Part shown: in pieces, positions 1,341 through 63,600 of the stretch | How the letters are laid out: the number at the start of each line of letters is the position of its first letter | Position numbering within the stretch: position 1 is the first letter of the stretch | IMG/VR virus record: IMGVR_UViG_3300035182_002586 | Location: 434,001-498,000 of that record | DNA: 64,000 nucleotides | Strand: one strand, 5' to 3' | Notes under the pieces: generated by a model | Database searches by the model: none | What the model was told of the DNA's origin: nothing | Seen by the model: the letters and a program-made list of their open reading frames with translations, nothing else | Program-made: the position numbers and the translations under genes

Positions 1341-1347
1341 GGTGTAC
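1341..1347 (+). promoter_or_regulatory. class B element GGTGTAC (leadered)
   Basis: upstream of GTG 1383. Confidence 0.4.
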
Positions 1348-1382
1348 CCATACCACACACCAAGTAGATCCTCGGAGGCCAC

Positions 1383-2183
1383 GTGATCACGTCGTGTCTC
1401 GCTACTGCCGGGTATGCCGCCAAGTTGCCCGCGCTCAAGGACCGCACGTTCACGTTCGGTCCCGGCCTCATCATTCTCTTCGGGCAGAACGGCTCGGGGA
1501 AGTCGACGTTACTGTCCATTCTCGCGAGCTACTCGGGGTGCTGGGAAGCTGGATGGACAGCGTTCTCTTCCAACTATGTGGGCTTCAACGACGCCCCGTT
1601 CCCGCACAGGCTCGCTACCCGTGGGAACCAAGCAGAGGTCGCGTGGGACGGCACCCCGAGCTTCTACAGCACGGGGCCCGAGTCCGGGCAGTCGGGGTTC
1701 AACAACGCCCTCGAAGACGGTGGTGAGGACGCGGACAACTACCTCCGGAGCCTCCTGGCTCCTGGTTCGGCAGGCCAAGGCCAGATCCAGTGGCTCAATC
1801 AGATGGAGAAGAAGCTCTCCGCGCCTCCGGATCTTCTCCGGGAAGACGGGACTCTACGCATACGTGGTCACGGTGAGGTCGAGAGGTCGAGCGTCAATAG
1901 CCTGTGGGGGGAGGCCATCGACGGCTTCCAGTCACACATCCGGTCGCTGCCCCACACGGGACCCGTGACGGTCCTTCTCGACGAACCCGACGCACACATG
2001 TCGCTGCCGAACCAGCACACCCTCTGGACGAAGGCCATCCCGCGCCTCTCCGTTGGGCGACAGGTCATCGTCGCCACGCACAGCGCATTCGCCCTATGCG
2101 CCCCGGACGCGACCATCATCGACCTCCAGCCGGGGTACGAGGATCGGTGCCGGAAGGTTCTTCGGGCTCTTCGCGAAGTCTGA
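1383..2183 (+). CDS. ABC/AAA-family ATPase (AAA_21-like)
   Basis: Walker A GQNGSGKST, Walker B VLLDEPD, H-loop IVATHS. Confidence 0.85.
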   Translation: MITSCLATAGYAAKLPALKDRTFTFGPGLIILFGQNGSGKSTLLSILASYSGCWEAGWTAFSSNYVGFNDAPFPHRLATRGNQAEVAWDGTPSFYSTGPESGQSGFNNALEDGGEDADNYLRSLLAPGSAGQGQIQWLNQMEKKLSAPPDLLREDGTLRIRGHGEVERSSVNSLWGEAIDGFQSHIRSLPHTGPVTVLLDEPDAHMSLPNQHTLWTKAIPRLSVGRQVIVATHSAFALCAPDATIIDLQPGYEDRCRKVLRALREV

Positions 2184-2210
2184 TGGATCGCTCCCCGCCT
2201 CGCATTGTAG
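2182..2210 (+). promoter_or_regulatory. class A promoter GATGGATC-N17-GTAG
   Basis: 7 nt to ATG 2218; overlaps upstream TGA stop. Confidence 0.8.
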
Positions 2211-2217
2211 GAGGGAC

Positions 2218-2565
2218 ATGGACACCAACACCACCCCCGCCGCCCCCGCTCTCGTCCGCTACCCCACCGACGGCCACACGCGTCCGCTGACGGTCGAGGA
2301 CATCACGGTCGGGCTCGTGACCCGTTACGTCATGTCCGACGGCGCGGTCGATCACTTCTCCGATTCCGTCATCACGAGCGTGGAGAAGAACGAGCACGGC
2401 CTGCTCTGCAAGATCGCTCGCCCCTACCTGCGGGTGACGCCGGACGGCACGCCGGTCGTGAGCTTCGAGAGTTACGAGGCGTACGCGCACCGACTCATCG
2501 AGCGCCACGTCGTGGTGATGTACTCGACGGGCAAGCCCGTGATCAACCTCGCGACGGAGAGCTGA
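2218..2565 (+). CDS. hypothetical protein
   Basis: ORF directly behind class A motif. Confidence 0.75.
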   Translation: MDTNTTPAAPALVRYPTDGHTRPLTVEDITVGLVTRYVMSDGAVDHFSDSVITSVEKNEHGLLCKIARPYLRVTPDGTPVVSFESYEAYAHRLIERHVVVMYSTGKPVINLATES

Positions 2566-2567
2566 AC

Positions 2568-2795
2568 ATGGCGAACACCCAAGTCGTTCGCGCACACCGC
2601 CTCGTCTTCGCGGTGCGTGACTGGAAGAACAACGGCGCCCTCGTCCCGCTTCGGACCCCGGGCCGCGAACCCTGGCCCGCTACGTGGGTCCGACGGGTCC
2701 CCGCCCTCTACGCGCTACACTCGGCCAACCAGTCGAGCCCCGGACGGTTCGCGCTGGTCACCCTGGACCTCGACAAACCCTACGCCGACGCATGA
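2568..2795 (+). CDS. hypothetical protein
   Basis: 75 aa ORF, tight packing. Confidence 0.7.
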   Translation: MANTQVVRAHRLVFAVRDWKNNGALVPLRTPGREPWPATWVRRVPALYALHSANQSSPGRFALVTLDLDKPYADA

Positions 2796-2796
2796 G

Positions 2797-3063
2797 ATGT
2801 CCTCTGCCCCTCCGCCCCCTCCAGTGTTCCACGCGATCTTCCCGGTCGCTGGAGCACTTCTCCAAGGGCATACCCTCCGTGTAAAGTCCCCTCCCTCCGA
2901 GGACGGGGGACCCTCAAAGGAAGTCGTGGCGGGGGAGGGCAAGGTCATCAACTGGTGCGGACAGATGATGCTCGAAGACGAAGACGCCTTCGAAACAGCT
3001 TGGCTCTTCATCGCGCTCGTAGGAACCGACGCCGCACTCCAGTCCGTCGAGGATGCCACCTAG
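2797..3063 (+). CDS. hypothetical protein
   Basis: ATG 1 nt after upstream stop. Confidence 0.65.
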   Translation: MSSAPPPPPVFHAIFPVAGALLQGHTLRVKSPPSEDGGPSKEVVAGEGKVINWCGQMMLEDEDAFETAWLFIALVGTDAALQSVEDAT

Positions 3064-3377
3064 TGAGGAGGCAGCGCGCGCCAAAGCACGACGACGCGCT
3101 TCATCACGTAGCCGGGGACAACACGGTCGGCCAGCACCACATCGGCCCCGTGCTCGAACAGATCGATCCAAGACTCGAACGCAATCGCCATGCGCCCCAA
3201 GTCGTGGCGTATCTCGTCCGCGTTCGCCGCAGTCATGACTTCCATCAGCTTGGCGAACAGCTCGGCGCGCAACAACACCCCGTGCTCATACGCCTCGAAG
3301 AGCTGCTTGGGTGTTCGTGTTTCCGCCACGACTGGGGGTTCGTAGAAGATGATCCTTGACCCCTGCTGCTGAGCCAT
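3060..3377 (-). CDS. hypothetical protein
   Basis: ATG abuts upstream TAG. Confidence 0.6.
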   Translation of the reverse strand: MAQQQGSRIIFYEPPVVAETRTPKQLFEAYEHGVLLRAELFAKLMEVMTAANADEIRHDLGRMAIAFESWIDLFEHGADVVLADRVVPGYVMKRVVVLWRALPPH

Positions 3378-3378
3378 C

Positions 3379-4005
3379 CTACGCCCCGACCCTCTCAAAC
3401 AGACGACCCCCAACTTGAGGGGCGCGCGCACGCAGCCGATCATCCGCAGTCAGCCACGTGTGGTTCGCCATCCGATAGAACTCGTTGGGGTTCGTTTCCA
3501 AGAGTAGCTTCTGCGCCAACATGTGATCTGGAGTCGGCACGTAGTCCCTAATGTGGACACAATAACGCGCCACGTCGATACCATCTTCCACGAGTACGAC
3601 GTTCATGGCAGAGCCACGCTCGATACGGAAGGTCCGTCCATCGGGGGCCCGAACGTGGAAGACGTTCTCCGCTGCGAGCTGCCGGCGGGCCTCTTCGTCA
3701 AGCAGGGCATCGAGGAGCCTCTCCGCCCGCGCCGTCGCTTGCCCCCACAGCTCTTCGCGGACTGCACGATCACGAGCCCGCAGTGCCTCGAAGTCCCGTC
3801 GTATGCCCTCGGGGAGCTGCCGGAAATGGAACAGGTCGATGGTCCACGCCCGCTCTTGGTCTCCACAGCCACAGGTGAACCCGAACCGCCGAGCGAACGC
3901 GAAGTCTTCCGTCCGACACCCCTCGTGAACGTGGTGCTCTCGGATTGCCTCTACCCACTCCCGTAGCGCCGGACGGAGTGCAGCCACACCAGGATCGTCG
4001 AACAT
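3379..4005 (-). CDS. conserved-looking hypothetical protein
   Basis: RAERLL..LL / YCVH..VP..DHMLAQKLLLE pattern; class B element upstream. Confidence 0.7.
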   Translation of the reverse strand: MFDDPGVAALRPALREWVEAIREHHVHEGCRTEDFAFARRFGFTCGCGDQERAWTIDLFHFRQLPEGIRRDFEALRARDRAVREELWGQATARAERLLDALLDEEARRQLAAENVFHVRAPDGRTFRIERGSAMNVVLVEDGIDVARYCVHIRDYVPTPDHMLAQKLLLETNPNEFYRMANHTWLTADDRLRARAPQVGGRLFERVGA

Positions 4006-4016
4006 CGCGAGGAGAT

Positions 4017-4032
4017 CTACACCACGGTGTAG
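4017..4032. promoter_or_regulatory. divergent class B pair TACACC-N2-GGTGTA
   Basis: 11 nt to ATG 4005 (-) and 8 nt to ATG 4041 (+). Confidence 0.7.
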
Positions 4033-4886: not shown

Positions 4887-4913
4887 TGGATCGGAGAAGG
4901 GACCGCACGGTAG
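4885..4913 (+). promoter_or_regulatory. class A promoter (N17)
   Basis: 7 nt to ATG 4921; overlaps upstream TGA. Confidence 0.8.
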
Positions 4914-4920
4914 TAGGGAC

Positions 4921-11417: not shown

Positions 11418-11424
11418 GTACACC
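11418..11424 (-). promoter_or_regulatory. class B element GGTGTAC
   Basis: 11 nt to ATG 11406. Confidence 0.6.
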
Positions 11425-11707: not shown

Positions 11708-11714
11708 TTACACC
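11708..11714 (-). promoter_or_regulatory. class B element GGTGTAA
   Basis: 10 nt to ATG 11697. Confidence 0.6.
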
Positions 11715-12930: not shown

Positions 12931-12937
12931 GGTGTAG
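12931..12937 (+). promoter_or_regulatory. class B element GGTGTAG
   Basis: 8 nt to GTG 12946. Confidence 0.6.
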
Positions 12938-13197: not shown

Positions 13198-13374
13198 CTA
13201 CGCTTGGTCCCGCGAAGCCTTGAAGGCTTCGAATCGAGCACGTGCGGCCTTCCGAGCACGTCGCAAGCGCATGTGCTCACGCCATGCGTTCAGGGGGTTC
13301 TTGACCTGCCACCAGCGGAACGCGACTTCGGACCGTACGAGGTTCCACCACGAGGTGAGGGCTCTGTGTTCCAT
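13198..13374 (-). CDS. small basic hypothetical protein (58 aa)
   Basis: minus-strand class A motif 7 nt upstream. Confidence 0.6.
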   Translation of the reverse strand: MEHRALTSWWNLVRSEVAFRWWQVKNPLNAWREHMRLRRARKAARARFEAFKASRDQA

Positions 13375-13381
13375 GTCTTCA

Positions 13382-13409
13382 CTACACCGCGATGAGAATT
13401 CGATCCATT
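13382..13409 (-). promoter_or_regulatory. class A promoter AATGGATC-N16-GTAG
   Basis: 7 nt to ATG 13374; back-to-back with 13423 copy. Confidence 0.75.
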
Positions 13410-13422
13410 CGCACCTCGGTCG

Positions 13423-13451
13423 GATGGATCGATCCGGGGGTCGCGCGGTAG
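13423..13451 (+). promoter_or_regulatory. class A promoter (N17)
   Basis: 7 nt to ATG 13459. Confidence 0.8.
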
Positions 13452-13458
13452 TAGGGAC

Positions 13459-13898: not shown

Positions 13899-13905
13899 GG
13901 TGTAG
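13899..13905 (+). promoter_or_regulatory. class B element GGTGTAG
   Basis: 8 nt to ATG 13914. Confidence 0.6.
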
Positions 13906-14780: not shown

Positions 14781-14787
14781 GGTGTAC
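14781..14787 (+). promoter_or_regulatory. class B element GGTGTAC
   Basis: 8 nt to ATG 14796. Confidence 0.6.
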
Positions 14788-17054: not shown

Positions 17055-17259
17055 GGGGCGCCGGTACACCGAGTGGGGGACGCCGAGAGGCGCGGCTCAC
17101 CTCCCAGTAATAGCGGCAGCCCTTCTCCGCGTTCAAGCGGTTGAGACGCTCGGTTTGTTGGTCGGCCTCATCGACCGACCCGACGACCAACTTCACAACC
17201 ACTCGGTCCCCGTCGGCCCGAAGAACCACGAAGCAGGGCTCAATTGTAGCGGGGTTCAT
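17044..17259 (-). CDS. hypothetical protein
   Basis: 71 aa; class B element upstream. Confidence 0.55.
   Translation of the reverse strand: MNPATIEPCFVVLRADGDRVVVKLVVGSVDEADQQTERLNRLNAEKGCRYYWEVSRASRRPPLGVPAPRAC
17064..17070 (-). promoter_or_regulatory. class B element GGTGTAC
   Basis: 9 nt to GTG 17054. Confidence 0.55.
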
Positions 17260-17272: not shown

Positions 17273-17292
17273 GTACACCGCGTCTGGTGTAC
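17273..17292. promoter_or_regulatory. divergent class B pair TACACC-N6-GGTGTA
   Basis: 13 nt to ATG 17259 (-), 9 nt to ATG 17302 (+). Confidence 0.7.
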
Positions 17293-18855: not shown

Positions 18856-18862
18856 GGTGTAC
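18856..18862 (+). promoter_or_regulatory. class B element GGTGTAC
   Basis: 11 nt to ATG 18874. Confidence 0.55.
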
Positions 18863-19998: not shown

Positions 19999-20005
19999 GG
20001 TGTAG
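19999..20005 (+). promoter_or_regulatory. class B element GGTGTAG
   Basis: 9 nt to ATG 20015. Confidence 0.6.
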
Positions 20006-20014: not shown

Positions 20015-20299
20015 ATGAGCACCGAACCCGCCCTCATGACCTTCGAGATGCTTCGCGACATCGCCACCCGGAAGGGCACGGTCCGCTGGACGGCCTCGGG
20101 CATCGTCGAGCACCTGCGGCTACACAAGAAGGGCTTCGTGATCGCCCGGAAGGTCAAGGACACCAAGGAGCACCGGATCAAGACCCACGACGACGGCTAC
20201 CGCTGCATCGAGGTCGCCAGGGACTCTCGGTTCCCGTCCGACCATCCGGAGGGCTTCGTCCCCACGATCCCCGCCGAGACACTCACGGGCCTGGTGTAG
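20015..20299 (+). CDS. hypothetical protein
   Basis: 94 aa ORF. Confidence 0.7.
   Translation: MSTEPALMTFEMLRDIATRKGTVRWTASGIVEHLRLHKKGFVIARKVKDTKEHRIKTHDDGYRCIEVARDSRFPSDHPEGFVPTIPAETLTGLV
20293..20299 (+). promoter_or_regulatory. class B element GGTGTAG doubling as Val-stop
   Basis: 8 nt to ATG 20308. Confidence 0.6.
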
Positions 20300-22082: not shown

Positions 22083-22103
22083 CTACACCGCGCTGTGGTG
22101 TAG
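22083..22103. promoter_or_regulatory. divergent class B pair TACACC-N7-GGTGTA
   Basis: 9 nt to GTG 22073 (-) and 9 nt to ATG 22113 (+). Confidence 0.7.
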
Positions 22104-22597: not shown

Positions 22598-23020
22598 CTA
22601 CGGAAGAAACTCGAACGGAAGAGAGTCCAGGAACAGGACTGTCCCTCGTGAGGCTTCGTGTCGAACGAAGGTATCGACCCCGAAGAAGGCTCCCACATAA
22701 CCTCTTGGCCCCGGGCTGAGTCCCTGACCGAGGGCTGCGAACTGAGCCACCCCGTTAAGCGCGTGGAGGATGTCGGCGAAGTCGGCCGGGTGGATGACCA
22801 TGGCCCGCACCGTGCGGTTCTGCCTCTGCGTCTCTGCGAGAAGCTCCCGGACGCGTTCGGCGGTTAGAGGGCCGAACCTCCGGTCCAGGTGGCCTGGGAG
22901 CGTCTGCTCTTCGAGCACGGGGACCGGAGGCTTCGGTGGTGGCGGAAGCTCTGGCTCTTCTTCCCCCGGCTCAAGGGGATCGTCGAGGAGGAGCCTCTCG
23001 TACGAGTTGAGTCGAGCCAT
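22598..23020 (-). CDS. hypothetical protein; Pro-rich N-part, capsid-A-domain-like C-part
   Basis: MVIHPADFADIL...YVGAFFGVDTFV...GTVLF. Confidence 0.65.
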   Translation of the reverse strand: MARLNSYERLLLDDPLEPGEEEPELPPPPKPPVPVLEEQTLPGHLDRRFGPLTAERVRELLAETQRQNRTVRAMVIHPADFADILHALNGVAQFAALGQGLSPGPRGYVGAFFGVDTFVRHEASRGTVLFLDSLPFEFLP

Positions 23021-23033: not shown

Positions 23034-23040
23034 GTACACC
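23034..23040 (-). promoter_or_regulatory. class B element GGTGTAC
   Basis: 13 nt to ATG 23020; abuts class A copy at 23041. Confidence 0.55.
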
Positions 23041-24428: not shown

Positions 24429-26483
24429 CTACGAGGCGCCGTTGGTCGGCGTCGCCGGGGTCTTCTTGCCGACCTCGGCGCGGATCTGGTTCCGCAGTGC
24501 CTCGGTCTCCGGGCTCCGCTTGGGGGCCGCCGAGAGCACCGTGTCAGCCGCGAACTTGTCCGACATCACCATCGTCAGCAGAGTCTCCAGGATGCCCGAG
24601 CCCTGGCCGTTCTGACTCCCGACGACGATGCGAGGCACCACATCGACCTTCGACTCACGGATGGCGTTCGAGAAGCCCTCCATGACCTGCTGAGTGAGCT
24701 GGAACTTCGGACCACCGTAGGCAGCCACCTGCTCCTCGATCGCCACGGCCTGCGCGATACCGACGCGTGCAGCCCGGTCCGCCTCGGCTTCGGCGAGGTA
24801 GCGAACCTTGTCCGCTTCGGCGCGCGCCATCGCGCGAACCTTGTCGGCCTCCGCTTCTGCCATCGCACGGATCTGCGAGGCCGTCTGAATCGACCGCTGG
24901 TACTGCGCCTTGCCCTCGTTCTCCTGCGTCCGGATGGAGATCTCGGACTCGGTGAGCTGCTGCTGAGCCCTCGAAACCGCCTCGGCCTCGCGAAGCGCGC
25001 GTTCCTTCTCCGCAGCCTTCTGCTGGCGGTCGTAGGTGCCGATCTGCTCTTCGGCGATCTGACGCGAGCGGAGCTGCGTCAGGATGGTGCCGATCTGCTT
25101 GTCGTTGTCGTCCGGCGACGGCGTGCCGATGAGGACCTCTTCCAGCTCCAGGTTGTACTGCGCGAACTTGGCCTTCATCCCCACGGCCGACTCGCTCTGG
25201 ATCTCGCTGCGCTCCTGAATGAGCTGGATCAGCGTCCGGGTCTGCGCCACGTTCTTGAAGTACGCGCTGACCATCGGGTCGAGCGTCTGGTTCACGAGGC
25301 GCTGGATGTCACCGAAGCGCTGGACAACGAGCGGCGCCTTGCGGTAGTCGATGTGCACGACAACCGAGAGCGGCAGCCAGGGCTCGAACGCGTCCTTGGT
25401 GATGAGCCCGACCTCGCAGAGGTTCTCGTCGAACTTGTGAGCAGACACTTCCGTCTCTTCCCACTTGAGGATGAAGTTCGTGGTCGGGACCGTGACGATC
25501 TTCCCGGCGTACGTGTTGAACGCGTACTTGCCCGGCATCAGAGCCTCGTCCCACACGCCGCGCTGACCCTTGCGAACCAGCTCCCCGTGCGAGTAGTCCG
25601 ACCCCGAGAGGTCCGCGCCCGCCTCGCCCGTGTAGGAGACTACGACGCCGACCGTGCCGACCTCGATGACCGTCTTGGGGATCAGCTCGACCGTCGCGAA
25701 GAGCCGGTTGATGTAGTAGGTCCCGTCGACGAGCACCTGCATCTGGCGCCCACGACGGCCGCCCGCAGCCAGGAAGAGCAGAGGGTCCTGGAAGTTGTTG
25801 TGGTAGGAGGGCTTCTCCGGATCCTCTCCGACGAGCGGGGCGATCACGTCCCCGTGGGAGAGACCCGGGCCGTCGTGCACGGTCACGACCCCGATCTTGT
25901 CGTCCGTGCCCCGGATCACGATCGGCTTGAAGCCATCACGCTCCCGGATGATGGTCGACATCTTCTCCAGCTCGTGCTTGTCATTCGACAGGCTCAGCCC
26001 ATACACCTCGTCCTCGGTGAAGACCGCGAAGAGGGCCGGGTTGATGGCGTACGTCCCCTCACGGAGGATCGTCATCTGCGGGCCCCGCTGACCTCCCCCT
26101 GCGAGGAACGCCCGAGCATCCCCGTAATTGGCGCACCCCACCACGCATCCTGCGAGGGTCTGCGTCGCTTCGAGCTGCTTGCCGTCGCGCGCGAAGACGT
26201 AGCCGATCTTGCCCTGCGGCACGGTGACCAGCGGCGCCTTGTGGACGCGGTACTGAATCGGCGTGAGCCAGTGGATGCCGCCACGGAGCATGTCGGGCTG
26301 GTAGCCCGCCTCGCCCCCGAGGGCCATGAAGCCGCTCTTGACGGAGCCCTTGCGTGACCACCGTTTCTCAACGACGGCCACGCGATTGTTCGGGATGACT
26401 CGTACCCCTGAGAGGAGCACAAAGAAGACGAGGAGGCCCAAGGCCACCTCGATGAGGAATGCCGGTTCGGGCAGGTGGTGCAT
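24429..26483 (-). CDS. SPFH/band 7 flotillin-family membrane protein
   Basis: N-terminal TM, LITKDAFE..LP.SVVVHID SPFH core, AEA/EAE coiled coil. Confidence 0.85.
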   Translation of the reverse strand: MHHLPEPAFLIEVALGLLVFFVLLSGVRVIPNNRVAVVEKRWSRKGSVKSGFMALGGEAGYQPDMLRGGIHWLTPIQYRVHKAPLVTVPQGKIGYVFARDGKQLEATQTLAGCVVGCANYGDARAFLAGGGQRGPQMTILREGTYAINPALFAVFTEDEVYGLSLSNDKHELEKMSTIIRERDGFKPIVIRGTDDKIGVVTVHDGPGLSHGDVIAPLVGEDPEKPSYHNNFQDPLLFLAAGGRRGRQMQVLVDGTYYINRLFATVELIPKTVIEVGTVGVVVSYTGEAGADLSGSDYSHGELVRKGQRGVWDEALMPGKYAFNTYAGKIVTVPTTNFILKWEETEVSAHKFDENLCEVGLITKDAFEPWLPLSVVVHIDYRKAPLVVQRFGDIQRLVNQTLDPMVSAYFKNVAQTRTLIQLIQERSEIQSESAVGMKAKFAQYNLELEEVLIGTPSPDDNDKQIGTILTQLRSRQIAEEQIGTYDRQQKAAEKERALREAEAVSRAQQQLTESEISIRTQENEGKAQYQRSIQTASQIRAMAEAEADKVRAMARAEADKVRYLAEAEADRAARVGIAQAVAIEEQVAAYGGPKFQLTQQVMEGFSNAIRESKVDVVPRIVVGSQNGQGSGILETLLTMVMSDKFAADTVLSAAPKRSPETEALRNQIRAEVGKKTPATPTNGAS

Positions 26484-26493
26484 GGGCGCGGTG

Positions 26494-26500
26494 GTACACC
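26494..26500 (-). promoter_or_regulatory. class B element GGTGTAC
   Basis: 10 nt to ATG 26483. Confidence 0.6.
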
Positions 26501-26521
26501 GAGTCCACCCCGAACGAGGCC

Positions 26522-27642: not shown

Positions 27643-27660
27643 GTACACCGGACGGTGTAG
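27643..27660. promoter_or_regulatory. divergent class B pair TACACC-N4-GGTGTA
   Basis: 11 nt to ATG 27631 (-), 9 nt to ATG 27670 (+). Confidence 0.7.
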
Positions 27661-28089: not shown

Positions 28090-28422
28090 TCAGCTCGCTC
28101 CGCGCTGCTGCATGTACCCAAGCCCGTAGCTTGGGGTGGAGAGCGCAGCCTCGCCACGCTCCTCGAAGGGTCGGGGGTCGATCGCCAGACCCTTCGAGGT
28201 CAGAAGCTCGCAGTACGTCCGGATCTGCTCCCACGAGACGTGGATCCCCATCTCCCTGAAGTCCCTCGACCGAGCCACAATCAGGCCGTGGTTCCAGTCC
28301 GTGGTGACGAAGAAGACCTCGCCTGGTCGGAGCCACGTACGTCCCGTGTCGAAGGACCGGAGCACGCGCAGGGTGTCGATGGGTTGGAGGCGCTCGATCC
28401 CGTGGCCACGTCGTTTGGACAT
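28090..28422 (-). CDS. hypothetical protein
   Basis: class B element 8 nt upstream. Confidence 0.6.
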   Translation of the reverse strand: MSKRRGHGIERLQPIDTLRVLRSFDTGRTWLRPGEVFFVTTDWNHGLIVARSRDFREMGIHVSWEQIRTYCELLTSKGLAIDPRPFEERGEAALSTPSYGLGYMQQRGAS

Positions 28423-28430
28423 GTCCACAT

Positions 28431-28437
28431 GTACACC
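28431..28437 (-). promoter_or_regulatory. class B element GGTGTAC
   Basis: 8 nt to ATG 28422. Confidence 0.55.
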
Positions 28438-28439
28438 GG

Positions 28440-29106: not shown

Positions 29107-29113
29107 GTACACC
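29107..29113 (-). promoter_or_regulatory. class B element GGTGTAC
   Basis: 7 nt to ATG 29099. Confidence 0.55.
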
Positions 29114-31512: not shown

Positions 31513-31519
31513 GTACACC
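31513..31519 (-). promoter_or_regulatory. class B element GGTGTAC
   Basis: 9 nt to ATG 31503. Confidence 0.55.
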
Positions 31520-31553: not shown

Positions 31554-31581
31554 GATGGATCAGCACCCCCTCGCACGGTAG
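31554..31581 (+). promoter_or_regulatory. class A promoter (N16)
   Basis: 7 nt to ATG 31589. Confidence 0.8.
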
Positions 31582-31588
31582 TAGGAGC

Positions 31589-32708: not shown

Positions 32709-32915
32709 ATGGCTCGTTTCGACCTCAAAGAGATCCTGGACATCTGCGTCACCAAGCACGGCTGCCGTATCGAGTACTATGGATCACACGTCCGCGTGCT
32801 GCCGCCCGACCCGAAGATGGGCATGGTCGGGATCTCGCAGCACCCGAGCGATCACCGGGCGATCCGGAACTTCATCGCGCAGCTCCGGCGCGCGGGCATC
32901 GACGTGAAGGTGTAA
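32709..32915 (+). CDS. HicA-like dsRBD-fold small protein
   Basis: GSHVRV..P...V.I..HPSDHRAIRN..AQLRRAG. Confidence 0.55.
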   Translation: MARFDLKEILDICVTKHGCRIEYYGSHVRVLPPDPKMGMVGISQHPSDHRAIRNFIAQLRRAGIDVKV

Positions 32916-39102: not shown

Positions 39103-39123
39103 GTACACCACGGTCCGGTGTAA
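39103..39123. promoter_or_regulatory. divergent class B pair TACACC-N7-GGTGTA
   Basis: 9 nt to ATG 39093 (-), 9 nt to ATG 39133 (+). Confidence 0.7.
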
Positions 39124-39132: not shown

Positions 39133-39501
39133 ATGGGTGCGACCCGGACCGTTCGCGTTGACGCGCTTCTCGTCGAGTACATGCAGGCCACCGCCTCGGT
39201 CAGAAAACTCCGAGATCGCACGAAGGTTCTGCAACGCCAGATCCTCTTGAAGGCGGGCTGGAAGGTCCACGCTCCGGGTTCCACGGGATGGCTGAAAGGG
39301 ATCGAGCGGCACGTCGCCTCGAACCCCAAGTCCAAGGTGACCGCCGGGTTCTACCAACGCTACTACGCGAACAAGGAGGTCTGGGTCGATCCCGTCATGA
39401 AGGATCTCCTCTTCATGGTGTCCTACGCCTGGACCCGGCATTTCGGGCGAATCAGCCGCTCCTGCGATCTCATCGCCAACGGTGTAGAGGCACGAGCATG
39501 A
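39133..39501 (+). CDS. hypothetical protein
   Basis: 122 aa ORF. Confidence 0.7.
   Translation: MGATRTVRVDALLVEYMQATASVRKLRDRTKVLQRQILLKAGWKVHAPGSTGWLKGIERHVASNPKSKVTAGFYQRYYANKEVWVDPVMKDLLFMVSYAWTRHFGRISRSCDLIANGVEARA
39481..39487 (+). promoter_or_regulatory. class B element GGTGTAG
   Basis: 10 nt to ATG 39498. Confidence 0.5.
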
Positions 39502-43114: not shown

Positions 43115-43121
43115 GGTGTAG
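43115..43121 (+). promoter_or_regulatory. class B element GGTGTAG
   Basis: 9 nt to ATG 43131. Confidence 0.6.
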
Positions 43122-43130: not shown

Positions 43131-43817
43131 ATGGACCCGCGAGACATCCGAGCCTGGCTCCGAGACCCCGAGACCAACGGGGGCGACCTCTGGCTCAAAG
43201 CCAACGGAGAGGAAGCGATCCGTCTCCTGCTTGGGCGTCTCGACGCCTTCGAGGATCGAGACGAGACGATCGCGCGCGACTCGGCGGAGCGGAGGGCACG
43301 CATGGACGCCTTCATCGCGAAGCTCGAAGAGAACGCGCCGCCCCCTCCGACCCCGGAGGAGATGGAGAAGACTGCGGAGAGCTTCGCCGAAATGTTCAAG
43401 CCGTGCGAGCACTGCGGCAAGTCCGGCATGTCCTGCATCGAGGACGAAAGCTGCCACTGCTGCTACGGCTGCATCCGCCTGCGGGACATCCTGCACGCCG
43501 TCCTGACCAACCCGAAGAGCGAGACCCTCGCGGCTGCGCGGGCAGCCTACGAGGAGAGTGACCCCCGCCAGTGGATCGGGTCCGAGATCGCCTACCGGCT
43601 CAAGGACCTTGGCGTGGAGGTGGTCCGGAGCCCGTTCCCCGACTTCATCCAGGGCAGCAAGGGGGACAAGACCTTCGCGGCGCGAGCGGACGGGATCAAG
43701 GTCTTCTACTGGATCAACCACGGGGAGGAGAAGCAGGCGGAGTACCTGGTCGACCTGATCGACACTCTCGTGGCCGAATTCCAAACCCCTCTGGATGGAT
43801 CGGCCCCGCCCCCCTGA
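43131..43817 (+). CDS. hypothetical protein with Cys cluster
   Basis: CEHC..SC..SCHCCYGC. Confidence 0.75.
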   Translation: MDPRDIRAWLRDPETNGGDLWLKANGEEAIRLLLGRLDAFEDRDETIARDSAERRARMDAFIAKLEENAPPPPTPEEMEKTAESFAEMFKPCEHCGKSGMSCIEDESCHCCYGCIRLRDILHAVLTNPKSETLAAARAAYEESDPRQWIGSEIAYRLKDLGVEVVRSPFPDFIQGSKGDKTFAARADGIKVFYWINHGEEKQAEYLVDLIDTLVAEFQTPLDGSAPPP

Positions 43818-43822
43818 GGTAG
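43794..43822 (+). promoter_or_regulatory. class A promoter (N17)
   Basis: 7 nt to ATG 43830. Confidence 0.8.
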
Positions 43823-43829
43823 TAGGGGC

Positions 43830-45436: not shown

Positions 45437-45790
45437 GTGTCGTTCGAGGATACCCTCACGGACGACAACCCACTGGCCGACGAGACCATCAGCGAGGGTG
45501 AGCTGGAGGTCTACCTGTCCGTGTTCCTCGGCGATCTGTTGACCAAGCTGGACCCCCGCGAGCGAAACGTCGTCGACCGTAGGTTCACGGACAACCCCGA
45601 AACACTCGAAGAGATCGCCAACAGCTTCGGCCTGTCGCGGGAGCGCGTCCGTCAGATCGAGGAGCGCTGCCTGAACAAGATCAGGGACGCCATGGCGAAA
45701 GGCGGCCACTTGGGCGTCCCGGGGACCTGGCGCATCGGCCTCGACGACTGGCCCGTGGTCATGGACAAGATGACACTGGTGGGGGAGTGA
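45437..45790 (+). CDS. stand-alone sigma70 region 3.2-4 (HTH) protein
   Basis: LDPRERNVVDRRF...TLEEIANSFGLSRERVRQIE..CL.KIR. Confidence 0.85.
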   Translation: MSFEDTLTDDNPLADETISEGELEVYLSVFLGDLLTKLDPRERNVVDRRFTDNPETLEEIANSFGLSRERVRQIEERCLNKIRDAMAKGGHLGVPGTWRIGLDDWPVVMDKMTLVGE

Positions 45791-45816
45791 TGGATCGAGC
45801 CATCACCGCCTTGTAG
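45789..45816 (+). promoter_or_regulatory. class A promoter (N16)
   Basis: 7 nt to ATG 45824; overlaps upstream TGA. Confidence 0.8.
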
Positions 45817-45823
45817 TAGACTC

Positions 45824-49898: not shown

Positions 49899-50098
49899 GC
49901 AAGCACTTCGACCACTGCAACGCCAACGGCCTGGTGGACGGGAGGATCCCGGTGGGCAAGCCCTGCCCCTTCCTCGCCAAGTGCCCGATGGCAAGCGAAC
50001 GTTGCCCCGGCTTCGAGGGGCAGCTCAAGCCCGTCGCCTACTCGTGCGCCGCCGCGCGAGGCTTCTCCATCTGCATGGAACCCAAGGATCCGGTGTAA
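49895..50098 (+). CDS. Cys-rich small protein
   Basis: CPF..KC....RCP...YSCAAARGF. Confidence 0.65.
   Translation: MSKHFDHCNANGLVDGRIPVGKPCPFLAKCPMASERCPGFEGQLKPVAYSCAAARGFSICMEPKDPV
50092..50098 (+). promoter_or_regulatory. class B element GGTGTAA doubling as Val-stop
   Basis: 8 nt to ATG 50107. Confidence 0.6.
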
Positions 50099-50106: not shown

Positions 50107-50544
50107 ATGACCCTCCAGACCAGCATCGACCGCCTCACGGCGATGTTCACGGCCGCCCTCCTGAACGCCATCCGAGAGACCGTCTCCAACACCTCCCTCA
50201 TCGGCCTCGCGGCCATGACCGAGCCGCGACGACCCGGCCGCCCGCCCCGGTGGAAGACTGAGGCCCTGCGCACCTTCGAGAAGACCACGGCGGTCGCCGC
50301 CGCCCCCAAGATCAAGAGGGCTCCCAAGGCCAAGCCCGTGAAGACGGAGACGGTCGAGGCGTTCACCCCGCCACCGGCTCCCAAGGCCAAGCCCGTGCCC
50401 ATCGTCGGGATCGTCAAGGGCAGCCTTGTCATCACCGAGAAGGACGGCCGATTCTCCATGAAGCTGAACGGCAAGCAGTACGGCGCGTCCCGCCGTCGCG
50501 ACCTCGTGCGCCAGGCGCGCCGGATCGGCGTCGCCCTGGTGTAG
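50107..50544 (+). CDS. basic protein with AT-hook-like PGRPP and APKAKPV repeats (putative nucleoid-associated)
   Basis: RRPGRPPR; 22-bp direct repeat at 50319-50340 and 50376-50397. Confidence 0.6.
   Translation: MTLQTSIDRLTAMFTAALLNAIRETVSNTSLIGLAAMTEPRRPGRPPRWKTEALRTFEKTTAVAAAPKIKRAPKAKPVKTETVEAFTPPPAPKAKPVPIVGIVKGSLVITEKDGRFSMKLNGKQYGASRRRDLVRQARRIGVALV
50538..50544 (+). promoter_or_regulatory. class B element GGTGTAG doubling as Val-stop
   Basis: 10 nt to ATG 50555. Confidence 0.6.
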
Positions 50545-53438: not shown

Positions 53439-53445
53439 CTACACC
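53439..53445 (-). promoter_or_regulatory. class B element GGTGTAG
   Basis: 11 nt to ATG 53427. Confidence 0.55.
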
Positions 53446-53977: not shown

Positions 53978-53984
53978 CTACACC
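53978..53984 (-). promoter_or_regulatory. class B element GGTGTAG doubling as Val-stop
   Basis: 11 nt to ATG 53966. Confidence 0.55.
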
Positions 53985-54925
53985 GCAGGAGCCGGGAATG
54001 ATGCGATCAGAGCACGCATAGCATCTTCCGCGACCTTGATCCCGTCCGCGTATACCCCACCCATGACGCGTCCGCGCACGGATTGTGTGTCGTACTTGCT
54101 GCTCCCGATGTTCCGGGTCACGTCCCAATAGGCCCACCGAACCCCGGAACCGTCGTTCAACCCCTCGCAGTTCTCGGACACCCCGATCGCCGTGAGGCTC
54201 CAACCCTGGAGGACAGTCCAGCACCCACAGAGGAACCGGCTCTCGTCCGCCATGGGGATCCCGTAGCCTGCGGCCGCAGCACGTGCCTGTGTCTCCGCCT
54301 CTTCCCACGTCCCCGCGCTGCCTGTCAGACGGTCCCGGGGCGGGCCGTCAGGTGGGTTCACGACGTGCGGCTTCACGCTCCACTCGAAGGTCTGCCGGAC
54401 GGGCACACGGCAAAGAAGCTCCTCCCACCCTCCAACCGGGAACTCCCCCATCTGCACCCTATCGTCGTAGAGCTTCCGGAGCCAGGCGGTGTCCCGCATC
54501 GTGTGCTTGACCTCCACCTTCCCCGCCTCGTTGCGCCACGTCGTGGAGGCGTGCGTCTGCACACCCCCGGCGAGGAACGACCAAGGCTTGTCCCGACGAA
54601 GTTCCTCGGAGAGCCCGTGGATCAGCAGGCCGGCACGCGCGATGGGATGCGCGCCCCGCTCGATCCTGTCGAGATCCTGCGTCAGCTCAGTTCTATCGTG
54701 GAGACGCCAGTAGCTCACGATCCACTGGAGGAAGGATTCCCCCACCAGCATGGCCCCGTCCCGCACCGAGGTCCCACGGTAGATCGCATCTCGCACCTCG
54801 GGCGGAGCCCGGCGACGCAGCTCCAAGACCGCATCACGGTACGTCGCCGGGATGTTCTCCGTCCCGTCCGCTGTCCGGTCCATCAGCGGAGCGAGAGAGT
54901 CCTCTAGCAGCAAACGCTCGTACAT
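53978..54925 (-). CDS. hypothetical protein starting MYERLLLEDSL
   Basis: 315 aa from ATG 54925, GGAGA SD. Confidence 0.7.
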   Translation of the reverse strand: MYERLLLEDSLAPLMDRTADGTENIPATYRDAVLELRRRAPPEVRDAIYRGTSVRDGAMLVGESFLQWIVSYWRLHDRTELTQDLDRIERGAHPIARAGLLIHGLSEELRRDKPWSFLAGGVQTHASTTWRNEAGKVEVKHTMRDTAWLRKLYDDRVQMGEFPVGGWEELLCRVPVRQTFEWSVKPHVVNPPDGPPRDRLTGSAGTWEEAETQARAAAAGYGIPMADESRFLCGCWTVLQGWSLTAIGVSENCEGLNDGSGVRWAYWDVTRNIGSSKYDTQSVRGRVMGGVYADGIKVAEDAMRALIASFPAPAV

Positions 54926-54935: not shown

Positions 54936-54942
54936 GGTGTAC
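54936..54942 (+). promoter_or_regulatory. class B element GGTGTAC
   Basis: 10 nt to ATG 54953. Confidence 0.55.
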
Positions 54943-56228: not shown

Positions 56229-56235
56229 GTACACC
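56229..56235 (-). promoter_or_regulatory. class B element GGTGTAC
   Basis: 10 nt to ATG 56218; divergent from class A at 56240. Confidence 0.6.
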
Positions 56236-56239: not shown

Positions 56240-56268
56240 GATGGATCACCCCACCCCCCGCGCTGTAG
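56240..56268 (+). promoter_or_regulatory. class A promoter (N17)
   Basis: 7 nt to ATG 56276. Confidence 0.8.
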
Positions 56269-56275
56269 AGAGGAC

Positions 56276-57763: not shown

Positions 57764-57768
57764 AACCG

Positions 57769-57797
57769 GATGGATCGGCCCGTACCTCGCGGTGTAA
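57769..57797 (+). promoter_or_regulatory. hybrid class A/B promoter GATGGATC-N14-GGTGTAA, leadered
   Basis: GAGGT SD before ATG 57832. Confidence 0.7.
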
Positions 57798-61957: not shown

Positions 61958-62226
61958 TAGGGGTTCTCCTCCATCAGGAGCGCCTCGTAGACGTCCGCCA
62001 CGTCGCCGCGCGGACTCGGCCTCTCCATCGACGCCTCGCGCTCCATGGACATTTGGTTCAACCACCCGACCCTCATGGCACCGAGAATCTGAGGGCAGGT
62101 GAAGTCTCGATCCTTGCAGTAGACCCGGCCGGCATCGTCCACCCAGACGACCTCCCCGATGTCGATGTGGAACTTGACCTTCCCCGCCACCACATCGAAG
62201 GGACGCGCCGCGACGTAGCAATGCAT
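61954..62226 (-). CDS. hypothetical protein ending VYEALLMEENPY
   Basis: class B element 10 nt upstream. Confidence 0.65.
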   Translation of the reverse strand: MHCYVAARPFDVVAGKVKFHIDIGEVVWVDDAGRVYCKDRDFTCPQILGAMRVGWLNQMSMEREASMERPSPRGDVADVYEALLMEENPY

Positions 62227-62236
62227 GCGGCCGCCC

Positions 62237-62243
62237 CTACACC
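62237..62243 (-). promoter_or_regulatory. class B element GGTGTAG
   Basis: 10 nt to ATG 62226. Confidence 0.6.
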
Positions 62244-62249
62244 GCGAGG

Positions 62250-62483
62250 TCAGAGAAGGGGCCGGATCTTCTCCACCGTCTCCGCGTACGCCAGCGAGAC
62301 CGGCTGCTCGTCCTCGTCATCACCCCACGTGCGGCCCACCTTCGAGTGAGCCTCGCAGGCGAAGTACATGTCCCCCGCGTAGTCCACGCAACGCTTGGTG
62401 GCCGTCTCCGAGCACTGGTAGCACAGGGGAAGCTGACCGAGGAGCGTCTTGACCAGACCGCGAAGCTCGCCGTCGTCACACAT
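62250..62483 (-). CDS. zinc-finger hypothetical protein
   Basis: CYQC...CEAH. Confidence 0.6.
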   Translation of the reverse strand: MCDDGELRGLVKTLLGQLPLCYQCSETATKRCVDYAGDMYFACEAHSKVGRTWGDDEDEQPVSLAYAETVEKIRPLL

Positions 62484-62599
62484 GGGGTTCTTTCCTAGCA
62501 CGGGAGACGAACCGAGTCTCACAAGATACCAAGCGGCGCGAAGCGCCGCGCCCGGGGGTAAAGTCGATTTTTCAACCCCGGCCCACGATACCCGGCAAA

Positions 62600-63298
62600 T
62601 CAGGCCAGTGCGTCCCACAGGGCCGAAAGACGCCGCATCTCGGCCCCTATCTCCCCGAGCGCCTTCTTCACGTACGGCGCCATGTGCTTCGCGATGATCG
62701 CCGAGTGACGCTCCAGGTGCTTGTCCCGGCCCGCCACGTCCTTCGGGCACTCCCCCATCGCCCGGATCTCCTGACGCATCGCCTCCAACACGTCCTCCGG
62801 AGTCCCCGGAGCGAACGCCAGCTCCCGCGCCACCGGAGCGCTCAGACGCTCCCGGCCCATGCGGACCCCGTGCACGTCGTACGCGCACCAGCGGACGCCC
62901 TTCGGCAGCTTGTCCGCCTCCTTGTGACTCCCCACCACGATGACCGGCCACGCCTCGTACCCGTCGTAGACCGTGTACGGCACCGGCATCTGGAACGTGT
63001 GGCCCTTCACCACGTCGCGGCTGAACCGCCTCTTCGTCGACCCTACCCGGATCGCCATCCACCGGAGCGCCGTGTACGTGTACTCGCGCTCCATCCCGTG
63101 CAGGTGCGAAGCGTAGTCGAACCCGATCAGACGTTTGCCCCGGTCGTAGGACAGGTCCTCCGACGGGTCGCCCGCCGACCGGAACCCGCCCGGCTTGCCC
63201 TTCACCTCGGGCCAGCCCCGGAAGTTCGCCTGCATGAAGGCGACCATCTTCCGCTGCGCCGCCTCGGACTTCGTACGGATCGCGATGCTGTAACCCAT
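62600..63298 (-). CDS. hypothetical protein
   Basis: 232 aa; LSYD.GK..IGFDY..YDG.E motifs. Confidence 0.8.
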   Translation of the reverse strand: MGYSIAIRTKSEAAQRKMVAFMQANFRGWPEVKGKPGGFRSAGDPSEDLSYDRGKRLIGFDYASHLHGMEREYTYTALRWMAIRVGSTKRRFSRDVVKGHTFQMPVPYTVYDGYEAWPVIVVGSHKEADKLPKGVRWCAYDVHGVRMGRERLSAPVARELAFAPGTPEDVLEAMRQEIRAMGECPKDVAGRDKHLERHSAIIAKHMAPYVKKALGEIGAEMRRLSALWDALA

Positions 63299-63308
63299 GG
63301 AATGGGTC

Positions 63309-63315
63309 GTACACC
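63309..63315 (-). promoter_or_regulatory. class B element GGTGTAC
   Basis: 10 nt to ATG 63298. Confidence 0.6.
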
Positions 63316-63341
63316 AAGCTCGACCCCTTGCCCAGATGTCC

Positions 63342-63347
63342 TATGAT
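63342..63347 (+). promoter_or_regulatory. -10-like TATGAT (leaderless spacing)
   Basis: 6 nt to ATG 63354. Confidence 0.45.
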
Positions 63348-63353
63348 CCGAAC

Positions 63354-63587
63354 ATGGGCTACGACGTCTGGATCGAAGCCACCCTCCACGGACGAAAGGG
63401 ACGGGCCACGCGCACCGGCAGACCCGCCACCCACTCGTGGGACGAATGGCTCTTCGTCCCGGACGAGCCCAAGGACGAGATCGATCACGACCACCCCAAG
63501 CAGGGGGACGCAGGGTTCGAGCTGCACGGCACGGTCGTCGGCCCGCCCCCCTGGTGGAAGTACCACGGGATCAAGCCCCTCCTGTAG
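63354..63587 (+). CDS. hypothetical protein
   Basis: 77 aa. Confidence 0.6.
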   Translation: MGYDVWIEATLHGRKGRATRTGRPATHSWDEWLFVPDEPKDEIDHDHPKQGDAGFELHGTVVGPPPWWKYHGIKPLL

Positions 63588-63593
63588 CGCCCC

Positions 63594-63600
63594 GGTGTAC
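63594..63600 (+). promoter_or_regulatory. class B element GGTGTAC
   Basis: 12 nt to ATG 63613. Confidence 0.5.

What the first reader, a model, noticed from the sequence alone, without database searches (positions are those of the whole stretch)
1341..63600. Second regulatory class: single-box GGTGTA(G/C/A) 7-13 nt before start codons
Seen: about 40 copies before gene starts (22 on +, 18 on -), 36 of them 7-13 nt from ATG/GTG. Most first genes of minus-strand units carry it, including macrodomain, flotillin and YeaH. No conserved -35 box is visible, except hybrids at 13409(-) and 57769 that carry both classes and share the GTA core. In four places GTG-TAG/TAA is both the box and the Val-stop of the previous gene (20293, 50092, 50538, 53978). 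About a dozen copies also occur inside CDSs, so the argument rests on position. Established analogy: T4 late promoters are single-box elements read by gp55. Inference: a second temporal class (middle or late) with very short leaders.
Basis: partly seen in the sequence, partly recalled or inferred. Interest (0 to 1): 0.7.

Follow-up and report, generated by a model that had tools for sequence, protein, structure and literature searches.

The report
Phage gene-start box GGTGTA: single-box promoter
In this half-megabase uncultivated phage and its relatives, an exact 6-8 base word (Y-GGTGTA-S) sits about 10 bases before the start codon of roughly a fifth of all genes and most likely acts as a one-box, phage-specific promoter that makes messenger RNAs with almost no leader.

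Summary
The window lies at 434,001-498,000 of a 528,957-bp, 64% GC virus record. GGTGTA occurs 332 times in the genome. In 139 copies (42%) an ATG/GTG that opens a coding-like ORF follows 7-14 nt later, against 3.9% for permuted hexamers. The window holds 60 copies, 33-41 of them start-linked.

The logo is Y-GGTGTA-S with no -35 box and no TANNNT. One-mismatch variants are not used.

Box genes lack a Shine-Dalgarno site (15%). When the box lies 15-40 nt upstream, one appears (12/14). Five divergent gene pairs have only 34-39 nt between start codons, filled by two back-to-back boxes. Two hybrids place the box exactly where the -10 part of a second, two-box cassette (GATGGATC-N17-GTAG-N7-ATG) sits.

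The box is the top upstream hexamer in four of the five related phage loci examined (sigma-like protein 34-63% identical). It is about 30-fold rarer per Mb in three candidate host-lineage genomes. The phage encodes a divergent sigma-like protein and a stand-alone sigma region 4 protein.

Best reading: a phage-specific single-element promoter giving leaderless or near-leaderless mRNAs. No RNA data exist, so no transcription start site is shown. Timing is untested, but structural genes lack the box, so "late" is unlikely.

The parts
4026..4031 (+). box CGGTGTAG, 9 nt before ATG 4041 (281 aa, metallophosphatase)
4018..4023 (-). box TGGTGTAG, 12 nt before ATG 4005 (ORF 3379-4005); back-to-back with the box at 4026
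11419..11424 (-). box, 12 nt before ATG 11406
11709..11714 (-). box, 11 nt before ATG 11697
12931..12936 (+). box, 9 nt before GTG 12946
13372..13409 (-). hybrid: AATGGATC (-35 type box) - N13 - GGTGTAG - N7 - ATG 13374; the box sits in the register of the class A -10 part
13899..13904 (+). box, 9 nt before ATG 13914
14781..14786 (+). box, 9 nt before ATG 14796
17065..17070 (-). box, 10 nt before GTG 17054 (probable start; fails my ORF filter)
17274..17279 (-). box, 14 nt before an ATG; back-to-back with the box at 17286
17286..17291 (+). box, 10 nt before ATG 17302
18856..18861 (+). box, 12 nt before ATG 18874
19999..20004 (+). box, 10 nt before ATG 20015
20293..20298 (+). box, 9 nt before ATG 20308; GTG-TAG is also the Val-stop of ORF 20015-20299
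22084..22089 (-). box, 10 nt before GTG 22073; back-to-back with the box at 22097
22097..22102 (+). box, 10 nt before ATG 22113
23035..23040 (-). box, 14 nt before ATG 23020 (ORF 22598-23020)
26495..26500 (-). box, 11 nt before ATG 26483 (684 aa, SPFH/flotillin-like)
27644..27649 (-). box, 12 nt before ATG 27631 (369 aa, DUF444/YeaH); kept upstream of the orthologue in two relatives
27654..27659 (+). box, 10 nt before ATG 27670; divergent partner of 27649 with 38 nt between the start codons
28432..28437 (-). box, 9 nt before ATG 28422
29108..29113 (-). box, 8 nt before ATG 29099
31514..31519 (-). box, 10 nt before ATG 31503; first gene of a minus-strand unit whose later genes are SD-led
32909..32914 (+). 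box, 10 nt before ATG 32925
39104..39109 (-). box, 10 nt before ATG 39093; back-to-back with the box at 39117
39117..39122 (+). box, 10 nt before ATG 39133
39481..39486 (+). box inside the end of the upstream gene, 11 nt before ATG 39498
43115..43120 (+). box, 10 nt before ATG 43131
50092..50097 (+). box, 9 nt before ATG 50107; GTG-TAA is the Val-stop of the upstream ORF
50538..50543 (+). box, 11 nt before ATG 50555; GTG-TAG is the Val-stop of the upstream ORF
53440..53445 (-). box, 12 nt before ATG 53427
53979..53984 (-). box, 9-12 nt before GTG/ATG 53969/53966; overlaps the Val-stop of ORF 53978-54925(-)
54936..54941 (+). box (G at -1), 11 nt before ATG 54953
56230..56235 (-). box, 11 nt before ATG 56218; lone minus-strand gene; the box abuts the GGATGGATCA box of the divergent class A promoter
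62238..62243 (-). box, 11 nt before ATG 62226
63310..63315 (-). box, 11 nt before ATG 63298
63594..63599 (+). box, 13 nt before ATG 63613
1341..1346 (+). box with a leader: 36 nt before GTG 1383, with GGAGG in between
57768..57796 (+). hybrid with a leader: GGATGGATC - N14 - GGTGTAA, then 35 nt holding GAGG before ATG 57832
45437..45790 (+). gene for a 117-aa stand-alone sigma-70 region 4 protein (candidate part of the reading machinery; link inferred only)

Best explanation
Y-GGTGTA-S is a phage-specific, single-element promoter read on double-stranded DNA. Its GTA core corresponds to the -10 part of the phage's two-box promoters, and the upstream GG(T) takes the place of a -35 box. It is most likely read by host core RNA polymerase carrying a phage-encoded sigma-family factor. 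The candidate is the 393-aa sigma-like protein at genome 93,299-94,480, possibly acting with the small sigma region 4 proteins. Transcription would start a few bases downstream, at or within about 0-4 nt of the A of the ATG. The first cistron would then be translated as a leaderless mRNA without a Shine-Dalgarno site, while later cistrons of the same unit use ordinary SD sites.

Shown: position, exactness, conservation across relatives, complementarity with SD, and shared register with class A.

Inferred: that transcription starts there, which protein reads the box, and the timing.
For: 1. Position. 42% of all copies lie 7-14 nt before a coding-like start, against 3.9% for controls. 124 of 632 genes carry the box at -13..-20.

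2. All-or-none. Each one-mismatch variant occurs 0-2 times at that position. This is typical of phage-specific promoters and unlike SD sites.

3. Box and SD are complementary by distance. With the box 7-14 nt from the start, SD is present in 18/124. With the box 15-40 nt upstream, SD is present in 12/14 (Fisher p=1e-7). The overall SD rate is 38%.

4. Operon logic. Box or class A genes are the first genes of units and are followed by SD-led genes. The box is enriched (28% vs 17%, p=0.004) and SD depleted (19% vs 36%) after a divergent neighbour.

5. Divergent pairs. Five pairs have 34-39 nt between start codons, and this space holds only two back-to-back boxes.

6. Hybrids. Two sites put GGTGTA at the exact spacing from the GATGGATC box where class A has GTAG. 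One of them has a 35-nt leader with an SD.

7. No alternative signals. There is no sigma-70-type promoter and no terminator excess in 20 kb holding about 45 genes on both strands.

8. Start codons. 89% are ATG, with Y at -1 in 82%. The starts are confirmed by Pfam domain boundaries for CoaE, Dam, adenosine deaminase and ClpX, and by full-length YeaH homologues.

9. Conservation. The box is the top upstream hexamer before independently called genes in four of five related loci: L135 16/40, L218 4/15, L219 8/32, L220 9/39, L222 10/20. In L135 no hexamer ranking was run. The box is kept before YeaH while its flanks diverge.

10. Not a host signal. GGTGTA-N9-11-ATG occurs 20-47 times per 6.2-8.7 Mb in three Polyangiaceae/Myxococcales MAGs, against 111 in the 0.53-Mb phage.

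12. Precedent. phiEco32 gp36 reads a single element tAATGTAtA with the TSS 6-8 bp downstream (PMC8948821). In Deinococcus-Thermus, -10-only promoters abut ORFs (PMC12340547).
Against: - No transcription start site, no RNA data and no binding data exist; everything is positional.
- About 190 copies are not start-linked. If 6-8 bp sufficed as a promoter, many would be spurious promoters.
- Intragenic depletion on both strands (about 0.5 of a synonymous-codon shuffle) is no stronger than for other TA-containing words.
- Many box genes follow the upstream stop codon by only 17-24 nt, a layout also typical of ribosome-binding sites.
- The box lies 2-3 nt further from the ATG than the GTAG of class A, so the two classes cannot both start exactly at the A with the same geometry.
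- The host assignment rests on one gene.
Confidence: 0.68

Rival explanations
1. The box acts on RNA as an SD-independent translation-initiation signal. GGUGUA, 9-12 nt before the AUG, would be bound by the ribosome or by a phage-encoded factor, on transcripts that start further upstream.
For: - It occupies the general zone of a ribosome-binding site and replaces the SD there.
- It often follows the previous stop codon by a few bases inside same-strand gene rows.
- GGUG can pair with CACC of the 16S tail (textbook knowledge).
Against: - Only 4 nt are complementary to the anti-SD. GGUG ends 11-14 nt before the AUG, too far for that register.
- Neither GGTGAT-type nor one-mismatch variants are used.
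- When the box is 15-40 nt upstream, a canonical SD is added in 12/14 cases.
- Divergent pairs with 34-39 nt between starts leave no conserved promoter upstream.
- Hybrids place the box in the -10 register of a two-box promoter, once 35 nt from the start.
- The signal is not seen in candidate host genomes.
Confidence: 0.1
2. The box is an RNA cleavage site for a phage endoribonuclease. The enzyme would cut long transcripts just before each start codon and so produce short-leader mRNAs.
For: - An exact short word before many genes resembles sequence-specific processing, such as T4 RegB at GGAG (textbook knowledge).
- It would explain the lack of SD and the tight distance to the AUG.
Against: - Lone minus-strand genes and back-to-back divergent boxes would still need unseen promoters inside neighbouring genes.
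- No sigma-70-type promoters were found.
- The hybrids share register with a -35-type box.
- Leadered copies keep an SD downstream of the box, which fits a start site as well as a cut. That point does not discriminate between the two.
Confidence: 0.07
3. The box is the binding site of a phage transcription factor (repressor or activator) placed over core promoters that are themselves too weak in sequence to see.
For: - Exactness.
- Inverted pairs TACACC-N3-7-GGTGTA look like dimer operators.
- The phage encodes several HTH / sigma region 4-like proteins.
Against: - Most copies are single half-sites with a fixed orientation and a fixed distance to the start codon.
- The spacing between inverted copies varies from 3 to 10 nt.
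- No other promoter element is visible nearby.
Confidence: 0.1
4. The pattern is a compositional or gene-calling artefact.
For: - My gene caller is home-made and misses genes (81% coding).
Against: - An ORF-based test that needs no gene caller gives 42% against 3.9%.
- Independent JGI, ENA and Logan gene calls in relatives show the same box and distance.
Confidence: 0.01

Closest known systems
phiEco32 middle/late promoters read by the phage sigma gp36 (single element tAATGTAtA; PMC8948821, PMC12276001)
   Same: - A single, highly conserved element with no -35 box.
- A shared TGTA core.
- Phage-specific, with a divergent phage sigma present.
- In phiEco32 the TSS lies 6-8 bp downstream; the same distance here would put it at or just before the ATG.
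   Different: - About 6 promoters in a 77-kb coliphage, against more than 120 per genome here.
- Here the element is fused to start codons, in a leaderless design.
- The word differs (GGTGTA).
T4 late promoters (TATAAATA at -10; gp55 + gp33 + gp45)
   Same: - A single-box promoter read by a phage sigma-2-like protein, with a separate protein at the sigma-4 position.
- This phage also has a separate sigma region 4 protein.
   Different: - The sequence is unrelated.
- T4 late mRNAs have leaders with SD sites.
- The box genes here are non-structural.
- No gp55, gp33 or clamp link was tested.
-10-only promoters next to ORFs in Deinococcus-Thermus and their phages (TANNNT 6-7 bp before the ORF, PMC12340547; Lalka late TAGGGT, bioRxiv 10.64898/2026.04.20.719267)
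   Same: - One box a few bases before the start codon.
- No SD, leaderless mRNA, a high density of such promoters and few terminators.
- SD-led and box-led genes are two alternative classes.
   Different: - Those elements are true -10 hexamers of the host primary sigma, with A at position 2 and T at position 6.
- Here the sixth position is not T.
- The word is absent from candidate host genomes.
ECF-type sigma promoters (textbook: -35 GGAAC-like, 16-17 bp spacer, short -10 with a GT core)
   Same: - The companion class A cassette (GGATC-N17-GTAG) has this layout.
- The box shares its GTA core and register.
- The phage sigma-like proteins match the ECF superfamily model.
   Different: - The box class has no -35 element at all.
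- An upstream GG(T) extension is not a described ECF feature.

Membership tests
Primary-sigma -10 hexamer of leaderless genes (TANNNT) | A at position 2 and T at position 6 of the hexamer | tested here: not met
   With TA of the box as positions 1-2, position 6 is G 47%, C 23%, T 15%.
Primary-sigma -10 hexamer of leaderless genes (TANNNT) | The hexamer ends 5-7 nt before the start codon | tested here: met
   The modal gap after GGTGTA is 10-11 nt, so a hexamer starting at TA would end 6-7 nt before the ATG.
Primary-sigma -10 hexamer of leaderless genes (TANNNT) | The same signal is used by the host's own genes | tested here: not met
   20-47 matches per 6.2-8.7 Mb in three candidate host-lineage MAGs, against 111 in 0.53 Mb. 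The host identity is itself only a lead.
Single-element promoter of a phage-encoded sigma (phiEco32 gp36 / T4 gp55 kind) | One conserved element, no -35 box, upstream of many phage genes | tested here: met
Single-element promoter of a phage-encoded sigma (phiEco32 gp36 / T4 gp55 kind) | The phage encodes a sigma-family protein | tested here: met
Single-element promoter of a phage-encoded sigma (phiEco32 gp36 / T4 gp55 kind) | Transcripts start 6-9 bp downstream of the element | not testable with these tools
   No RNA run was listed.
Single-element promoter of a phage-encoded sigma (phiEco32 gp36 / T4 gp55 kind) | The phage sigma holoenzyme binds and initiates at the element | not testable with these tools
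   Needs in vitro transcription.
Shine-Dalgarno site | Complementarity to the 16S 3' tail, with degenerate variants in use | tested here: not met
   Only GGTG fits. One-mismatch variants are not enriched. The enriched SD words (GGAGG, AGGAG) belong to the other genes.
Shine-Dalgarno site | Not combined with a second SD on the same leader | tested here: not met
   12 of 14 boxes lying 15-40 nt upstream are followed by a canonical SD.
Extended -10 promoter (TGn + TATAAT) | TG one base upstream of a TANNNT hexamer | tested here: not met
   TG abuts TA directly (TGTA) and there is no TANNNT. The similarity is functional only: an upstream extension replaces the -35 box.

The most novel reading that the evidence does not exclude
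A split sigma system. One phage sigma-2-type factor would read the shared GTA core. At box sites the GG(T) extension would suffice. At class A sites a separately encoded, DNA-binding sigma region 4 protein (117 aa, window 45437-45790) would supply recognition of the GATGGATC box in trans. Together they would transcribe about a quarter of a half-megabase genome as leaderless mRNAs. Under this reading, promoter class is set by which sigma pieces are present, a layout not described for any phage or cell.
Probability: 0.12. Interest if true: 0.85.

Novelty: new variant of a known kind. Interest (0 to 1): 0.6.

Why it matters
Huge uncultivated phages are known almost only from gene content; how they time and drive expression is open. 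This work gives three things.

- A testable regulatory map: three upstream signal classes, at least 120 predicted one-gene promoters, and candidate sigma-like readers. It applies to a clade of 0.5-0.6-Mb phages found in sediment, mat, groundwater and hot-spring metagenomes.
- Evidence that large-scale leaderless expression may be a phage strategy outside Deinococcus-Thermus and Actinobacteria hosts.
- A practical aid: an exact 8-bp word that marks true start codons, which would improve annotation of these genomes.

Tried and rejected
- **RNA evidence.** No RNA run was listed for 6 kb or for 1.8 kb of the window. Laying DNA contigs of four metagenomes on 5.9 kb was swamped by bacterial YeaH homologues and truncated output. 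It was not usable for site-level conservation.
- **Relatives by DNA pattern.** Scanning IMG/VR with the class A pattern gave only scattered chance hits. Megablast against the phage collection found nothing. The search for related loci with YeaH in viral contigs found nothing.
- **A phage RNA polymerase.** No Pfam beta, beta' or T7-like hits. The T7-like search had no positive control. No clear DxDGD motif. Pfam and PHROGs on the largest proteins showed only tail and baseplate families. A very divergent polymerase is not excluded.
- **Intragenic avoidance as proof of DNA-level reading.** GGTGTA and TACACC are each about 2-fold depleted against synonymous shuffles. They rank only 14th and 16th of 120 control words, because TA words are depleted in general. 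This is not decisive.
- **Boxes before tRNA genes.** Boxes lie 13 and 15 nt before tRNA-Thr and tRNA-Ser, but 2 observed against 0.66 expected is not significant.
- **Orientation excess of leadered boxes.** 25 same-strand against 23 opposite, so no excess. Only the SD content of those genes is informative.
- **Literature.** Searches for the word itself returned only primer sequences.

Full report
**Context**

The window is bases 434,001-498,000 of a 528,957-bp IMG/VR virus record with 63.9% GC and the standard genetic code. The same sequence sits on a 620,031-bp contig in the large protein collection. No close record exists in the phage collection.

No gene finder is provided, so I trained a 3-periodic Markov model on the whole genome. 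GC3 is 85% and GC2 45%, so frames are easy to tell apart. The model called 632 genes. It misses some short genes. For that reason the key tests were repeated without gene calls, and again on relatives with independent public gene calls.

**The observation**

- GGTGTA occurs 60 times in the window (28 on +, 32 on -) and 332 times in the genome.
- It is the most enriched hexamer before called starts, with its first base at -15 to -18.
- 124 of 632 genes carry it at -13..-20 of a plausible start. Permuted hexamers average 3.2, and the only high controls are shifted versions of the same word.
- Without gene calls, 139 of 332 copies (42%) are followed 7-14 nt later (mode 10) by ATG/GTG opening an ORF of at least 40 codons with coding-type GC3. 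The figure is 3.9% for 10,476 control-word copies.
- In the window, 33 copies pass this strict test (19 on +, 14 on -). About eight more precede ORFs that fail the filter.
- The Val-stop overlaps and the two hybrids are as described.

**Anatomy**

- The logo is Y-GGTGTA-S. No position from -25 to -2 before the box carries information. There is no T where a TANNNT hexamer would need it.
- None of the 18 one-mismatch variants is enriched at the site; each occurs 0-2 times. The signal is therefore all-or-none.
- Start codons are ATG in 89% of cases, with a pyrimidine at -1 in 82%.
- Pfam domain boundaries (CoaE from residue 4, Dam from 9, adenosine deaminase from 7, the ClpX zinc finger from 7) and full-length YeaH homologues confirm that these proteins begin at the ATG right after the box.

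**A companion class**

Genes without the box show either ordinary SD words at -14..-8 or a 45-bp cassette: (G/T)GATGGATC, then 17 nt counted from GGATC, then GTAG, then 7 nt, then ATG. The cassette has about 50 copies. All its starts are ATG, and C is at -1 in 90%.

This is a two-box promoter that abuts the start codon. In the window, cassette genes open small plus-strand operons whose later genes are SD-led. Nearly every minus-strand unit opens with a GGTGTA box.

**Promoter or ribosome site?**

Several independent lines favour a DNA-level promoter.

(a) Box and SD depend on distance. With the box 7-14 nt from the start, an SD is present in 18/124 genes. With the box 15-40 nt upstream, 12/14 genes have a canonical SD between box and start (p=1e-7; overall SD rate 38%). 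Window 1341 is such a case.

(b) After a divergent neighbour, where a promoter is required, the box is enriched (28% vs 17%, p=0.004) and SD is depleted.

(c) Five divergent pairs have only 34-39 nt between start codons. That space is filled by TACACC-N-GGTGTA.

(d) The only two places in the genome where GGTGTA follows a (G/A)ATGGATC box have it at 13-14 nt. This is exactly the register of the class A GTAG. One of these sites abuts the ATG. The other has a 35-nt leader with GAGG.

(e) A consensus scan of 20 kb with about 45 genes on both strands finds no sigma-70-type promoter (1.7 expected by chance) and no terminator excess.

(f) As an SD the word fits poorly. Only GGTG pairs with the 16S tail, it ends 11-14 nt before the AUG, and neither GGTGAT-type nor degenerate forms are used.

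Two further tests were not decisive. Intragenic depletion on both strands is real but no stronger than for other TA-containing words. Boxes 13-15 nt before two tRNA genes are within chance.

**Conservation and specificity**

The YeaH gene of the window has homologues at 81% and 75% identity on metagenomic contigs. Both keep GGTGTA 11-13 nt before the ATG, although the flanks differ. On the 21-kb locus L135, 16 of 40 independently called genes have the box.

Homologues of the phage's sigma-like protein led to four more loci:

| Locus | Identity of sigma-like protein | Genes with the box |
|---|---|---|
| L218 | 63% | 4/15 |
| L219 (from a 624,784-bp scaffold) | 40% | 8/32 |
| L220 | 39% | 9/39 |
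| L222 | 34% | 10/20 |

In each of these four loci GGTGTA is the top upstream hexamer, and back-to-back divergent pairs occur in L218, L219 and L220.

The nearest cellular YeaH homologues are from Polyangiales/Myxococcales at 64-67% identity, which gives a host lead only. In three such MAGs, GGTGTA-N9-11-ATG occurs 20-47 times per 6.2-8.7 Mb, against 111 in the 0.53-Mb phage. The signal therefore belongs to the phage clade, not to the candidate host's general machinery.

**Candidate readers**

No RNA polymerase subunit or T7-like enzyme was detected. The genome does encode sigma-family proteins:

- A 117-aa stand-alone sigma-70 region 4 protein in the window at 45437-45790 (PF04545, E=5.6e-18).
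- A 215-aa protein with region 4.
- A 393-aa protein with weak region 2 and ECF-model matches.

**Timing**

Box genes are absent from the structural block (220-280 kb; baseplate J and tail families). They encode ArgRS, ClpX-like ATPase, two DNA methylases, CoaE, adenosine deaminase, SNF2 helicase, flotillin-like and YeaH proteins. This argues against a 'late' class in the structural sense. Early versus middle cannot be told. The structural block shows a third candidate word, TTCTTATC, 34-56 nt before SD-led genes.

**Comparison with known systems**

The closest functional precedent is the single-element promoter tAATGTAtA of phiEco32. It is read by the phage sigma gp36, with the TSS 6-8 bp downstream (PMC8948821). 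The same distance here would put the TSS at or just before the ATG.

T4 late promoters (gp55), and the -10-only promoters next to ORFs in Deinococcus-Thermus and in Thermus phages (PMC12340547; bioRxiv 10.64898/2026.04.20.719267), share the one-box or leaderless logic. They differ in sequence, in reader, or in being host-type signals.

I found no description of this word or of this clade's promoters in the papers searched. That search is limited.

**Verdict**

The promoter reading is well supported by indirect evidence (about 0.7) but lacks any TSS. The temporal label is untested, and 'late' is unlikely. I file it as a new variant of a known kind: a phage-specific single-element promoter, used here at very high density and fused to start codons.

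Noticed in passing
window 2184-2217, 4887-4920, 13425-13458, 31555-31588, 43796-43829, 45790-45823, 56242-56275 and others; genome-wide about 50 copies: A two-box cassette, (G/T)GATGGATC-N17-GTAG-N7-ATG, directly abuts ATG start codons. It precedes the first gene of small operons whose later genes are SD-led. Copies are concentrated at 420-529 kb and 0-20 kb of the genome. All starts are ATG, and C is at -1 in 90%.
   Followed up: partly
genome 211,471(-), 226,111(-), 240,385(-), 250,980(-), 397,066(-) and others (outside the window): A T-rich word, TTCTTATC, has 17 copies and lies 34-56 nt before SD-led genes of the structural (tail/baseplate) block. It is a candidate third (late?) promoter class.
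   Followed up: partly
window 45437-45790 (+): A 117-aa protein consists only of sigma-70 region 4 (PF04545, E=5.6e-18). It is closest to the C-termini of RpoH, RpoS and RpoD and lies inside a class A operon.
   Followed up: partly
genome 93,299-94,480 (+) (L115:13299-14480): A divergent sigma-like protein of 393 aa has a beta-rich insertion (residues about 136-245) inside the sigma-2-like domain. In relatives it is syntenic with the CoaE and N6/N4 methylase genes, both of which carry the box.
   Followed up: partly
genome 123,254-176,528 (+): 53 tRNA genes, including one with anticodon TTA ('tRNA-Stop'), plus a tmRNA with tag ANDNGTVITALKAAA, all on one strand.
   Followed up: no
L222:1-4733: A related phage contig carries type I-C-like cas genes (Cas3-like helicase, Cas7, Csd1, Cas5d) next to box-driven genes.
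   Followed up: no
genome about 290,890-290,949 (upstream of the gene at 290,950): Three tandem copies of GGGTAAGATATGGAG lie directly before a start codon.
   Followed up: no
window 24429-27631 (-): The flotillin-like (SPFH) and YeaH/DUF444 genes are adjacent. The closest cellular YeaH homologues are from Polyangiales/Myxococcales (64-67%). This is the only host lead.
   Followed up: partly
window 28119-28440: One metagenome (run X4) holds a variant in which about 320 bp (the gene at 28090-28422) is replaced by 31 other letters. Those letters again contain GTACACC, which is a box on the minus strand.
   Followed up: no
whole record: IMG/VR labels the 529-kb record 'provirus', while the same protein lies on a 620,031-bp contig in the large collection. 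The roughly 91 kb that were trimmed off were not examined.
   Followed up: no
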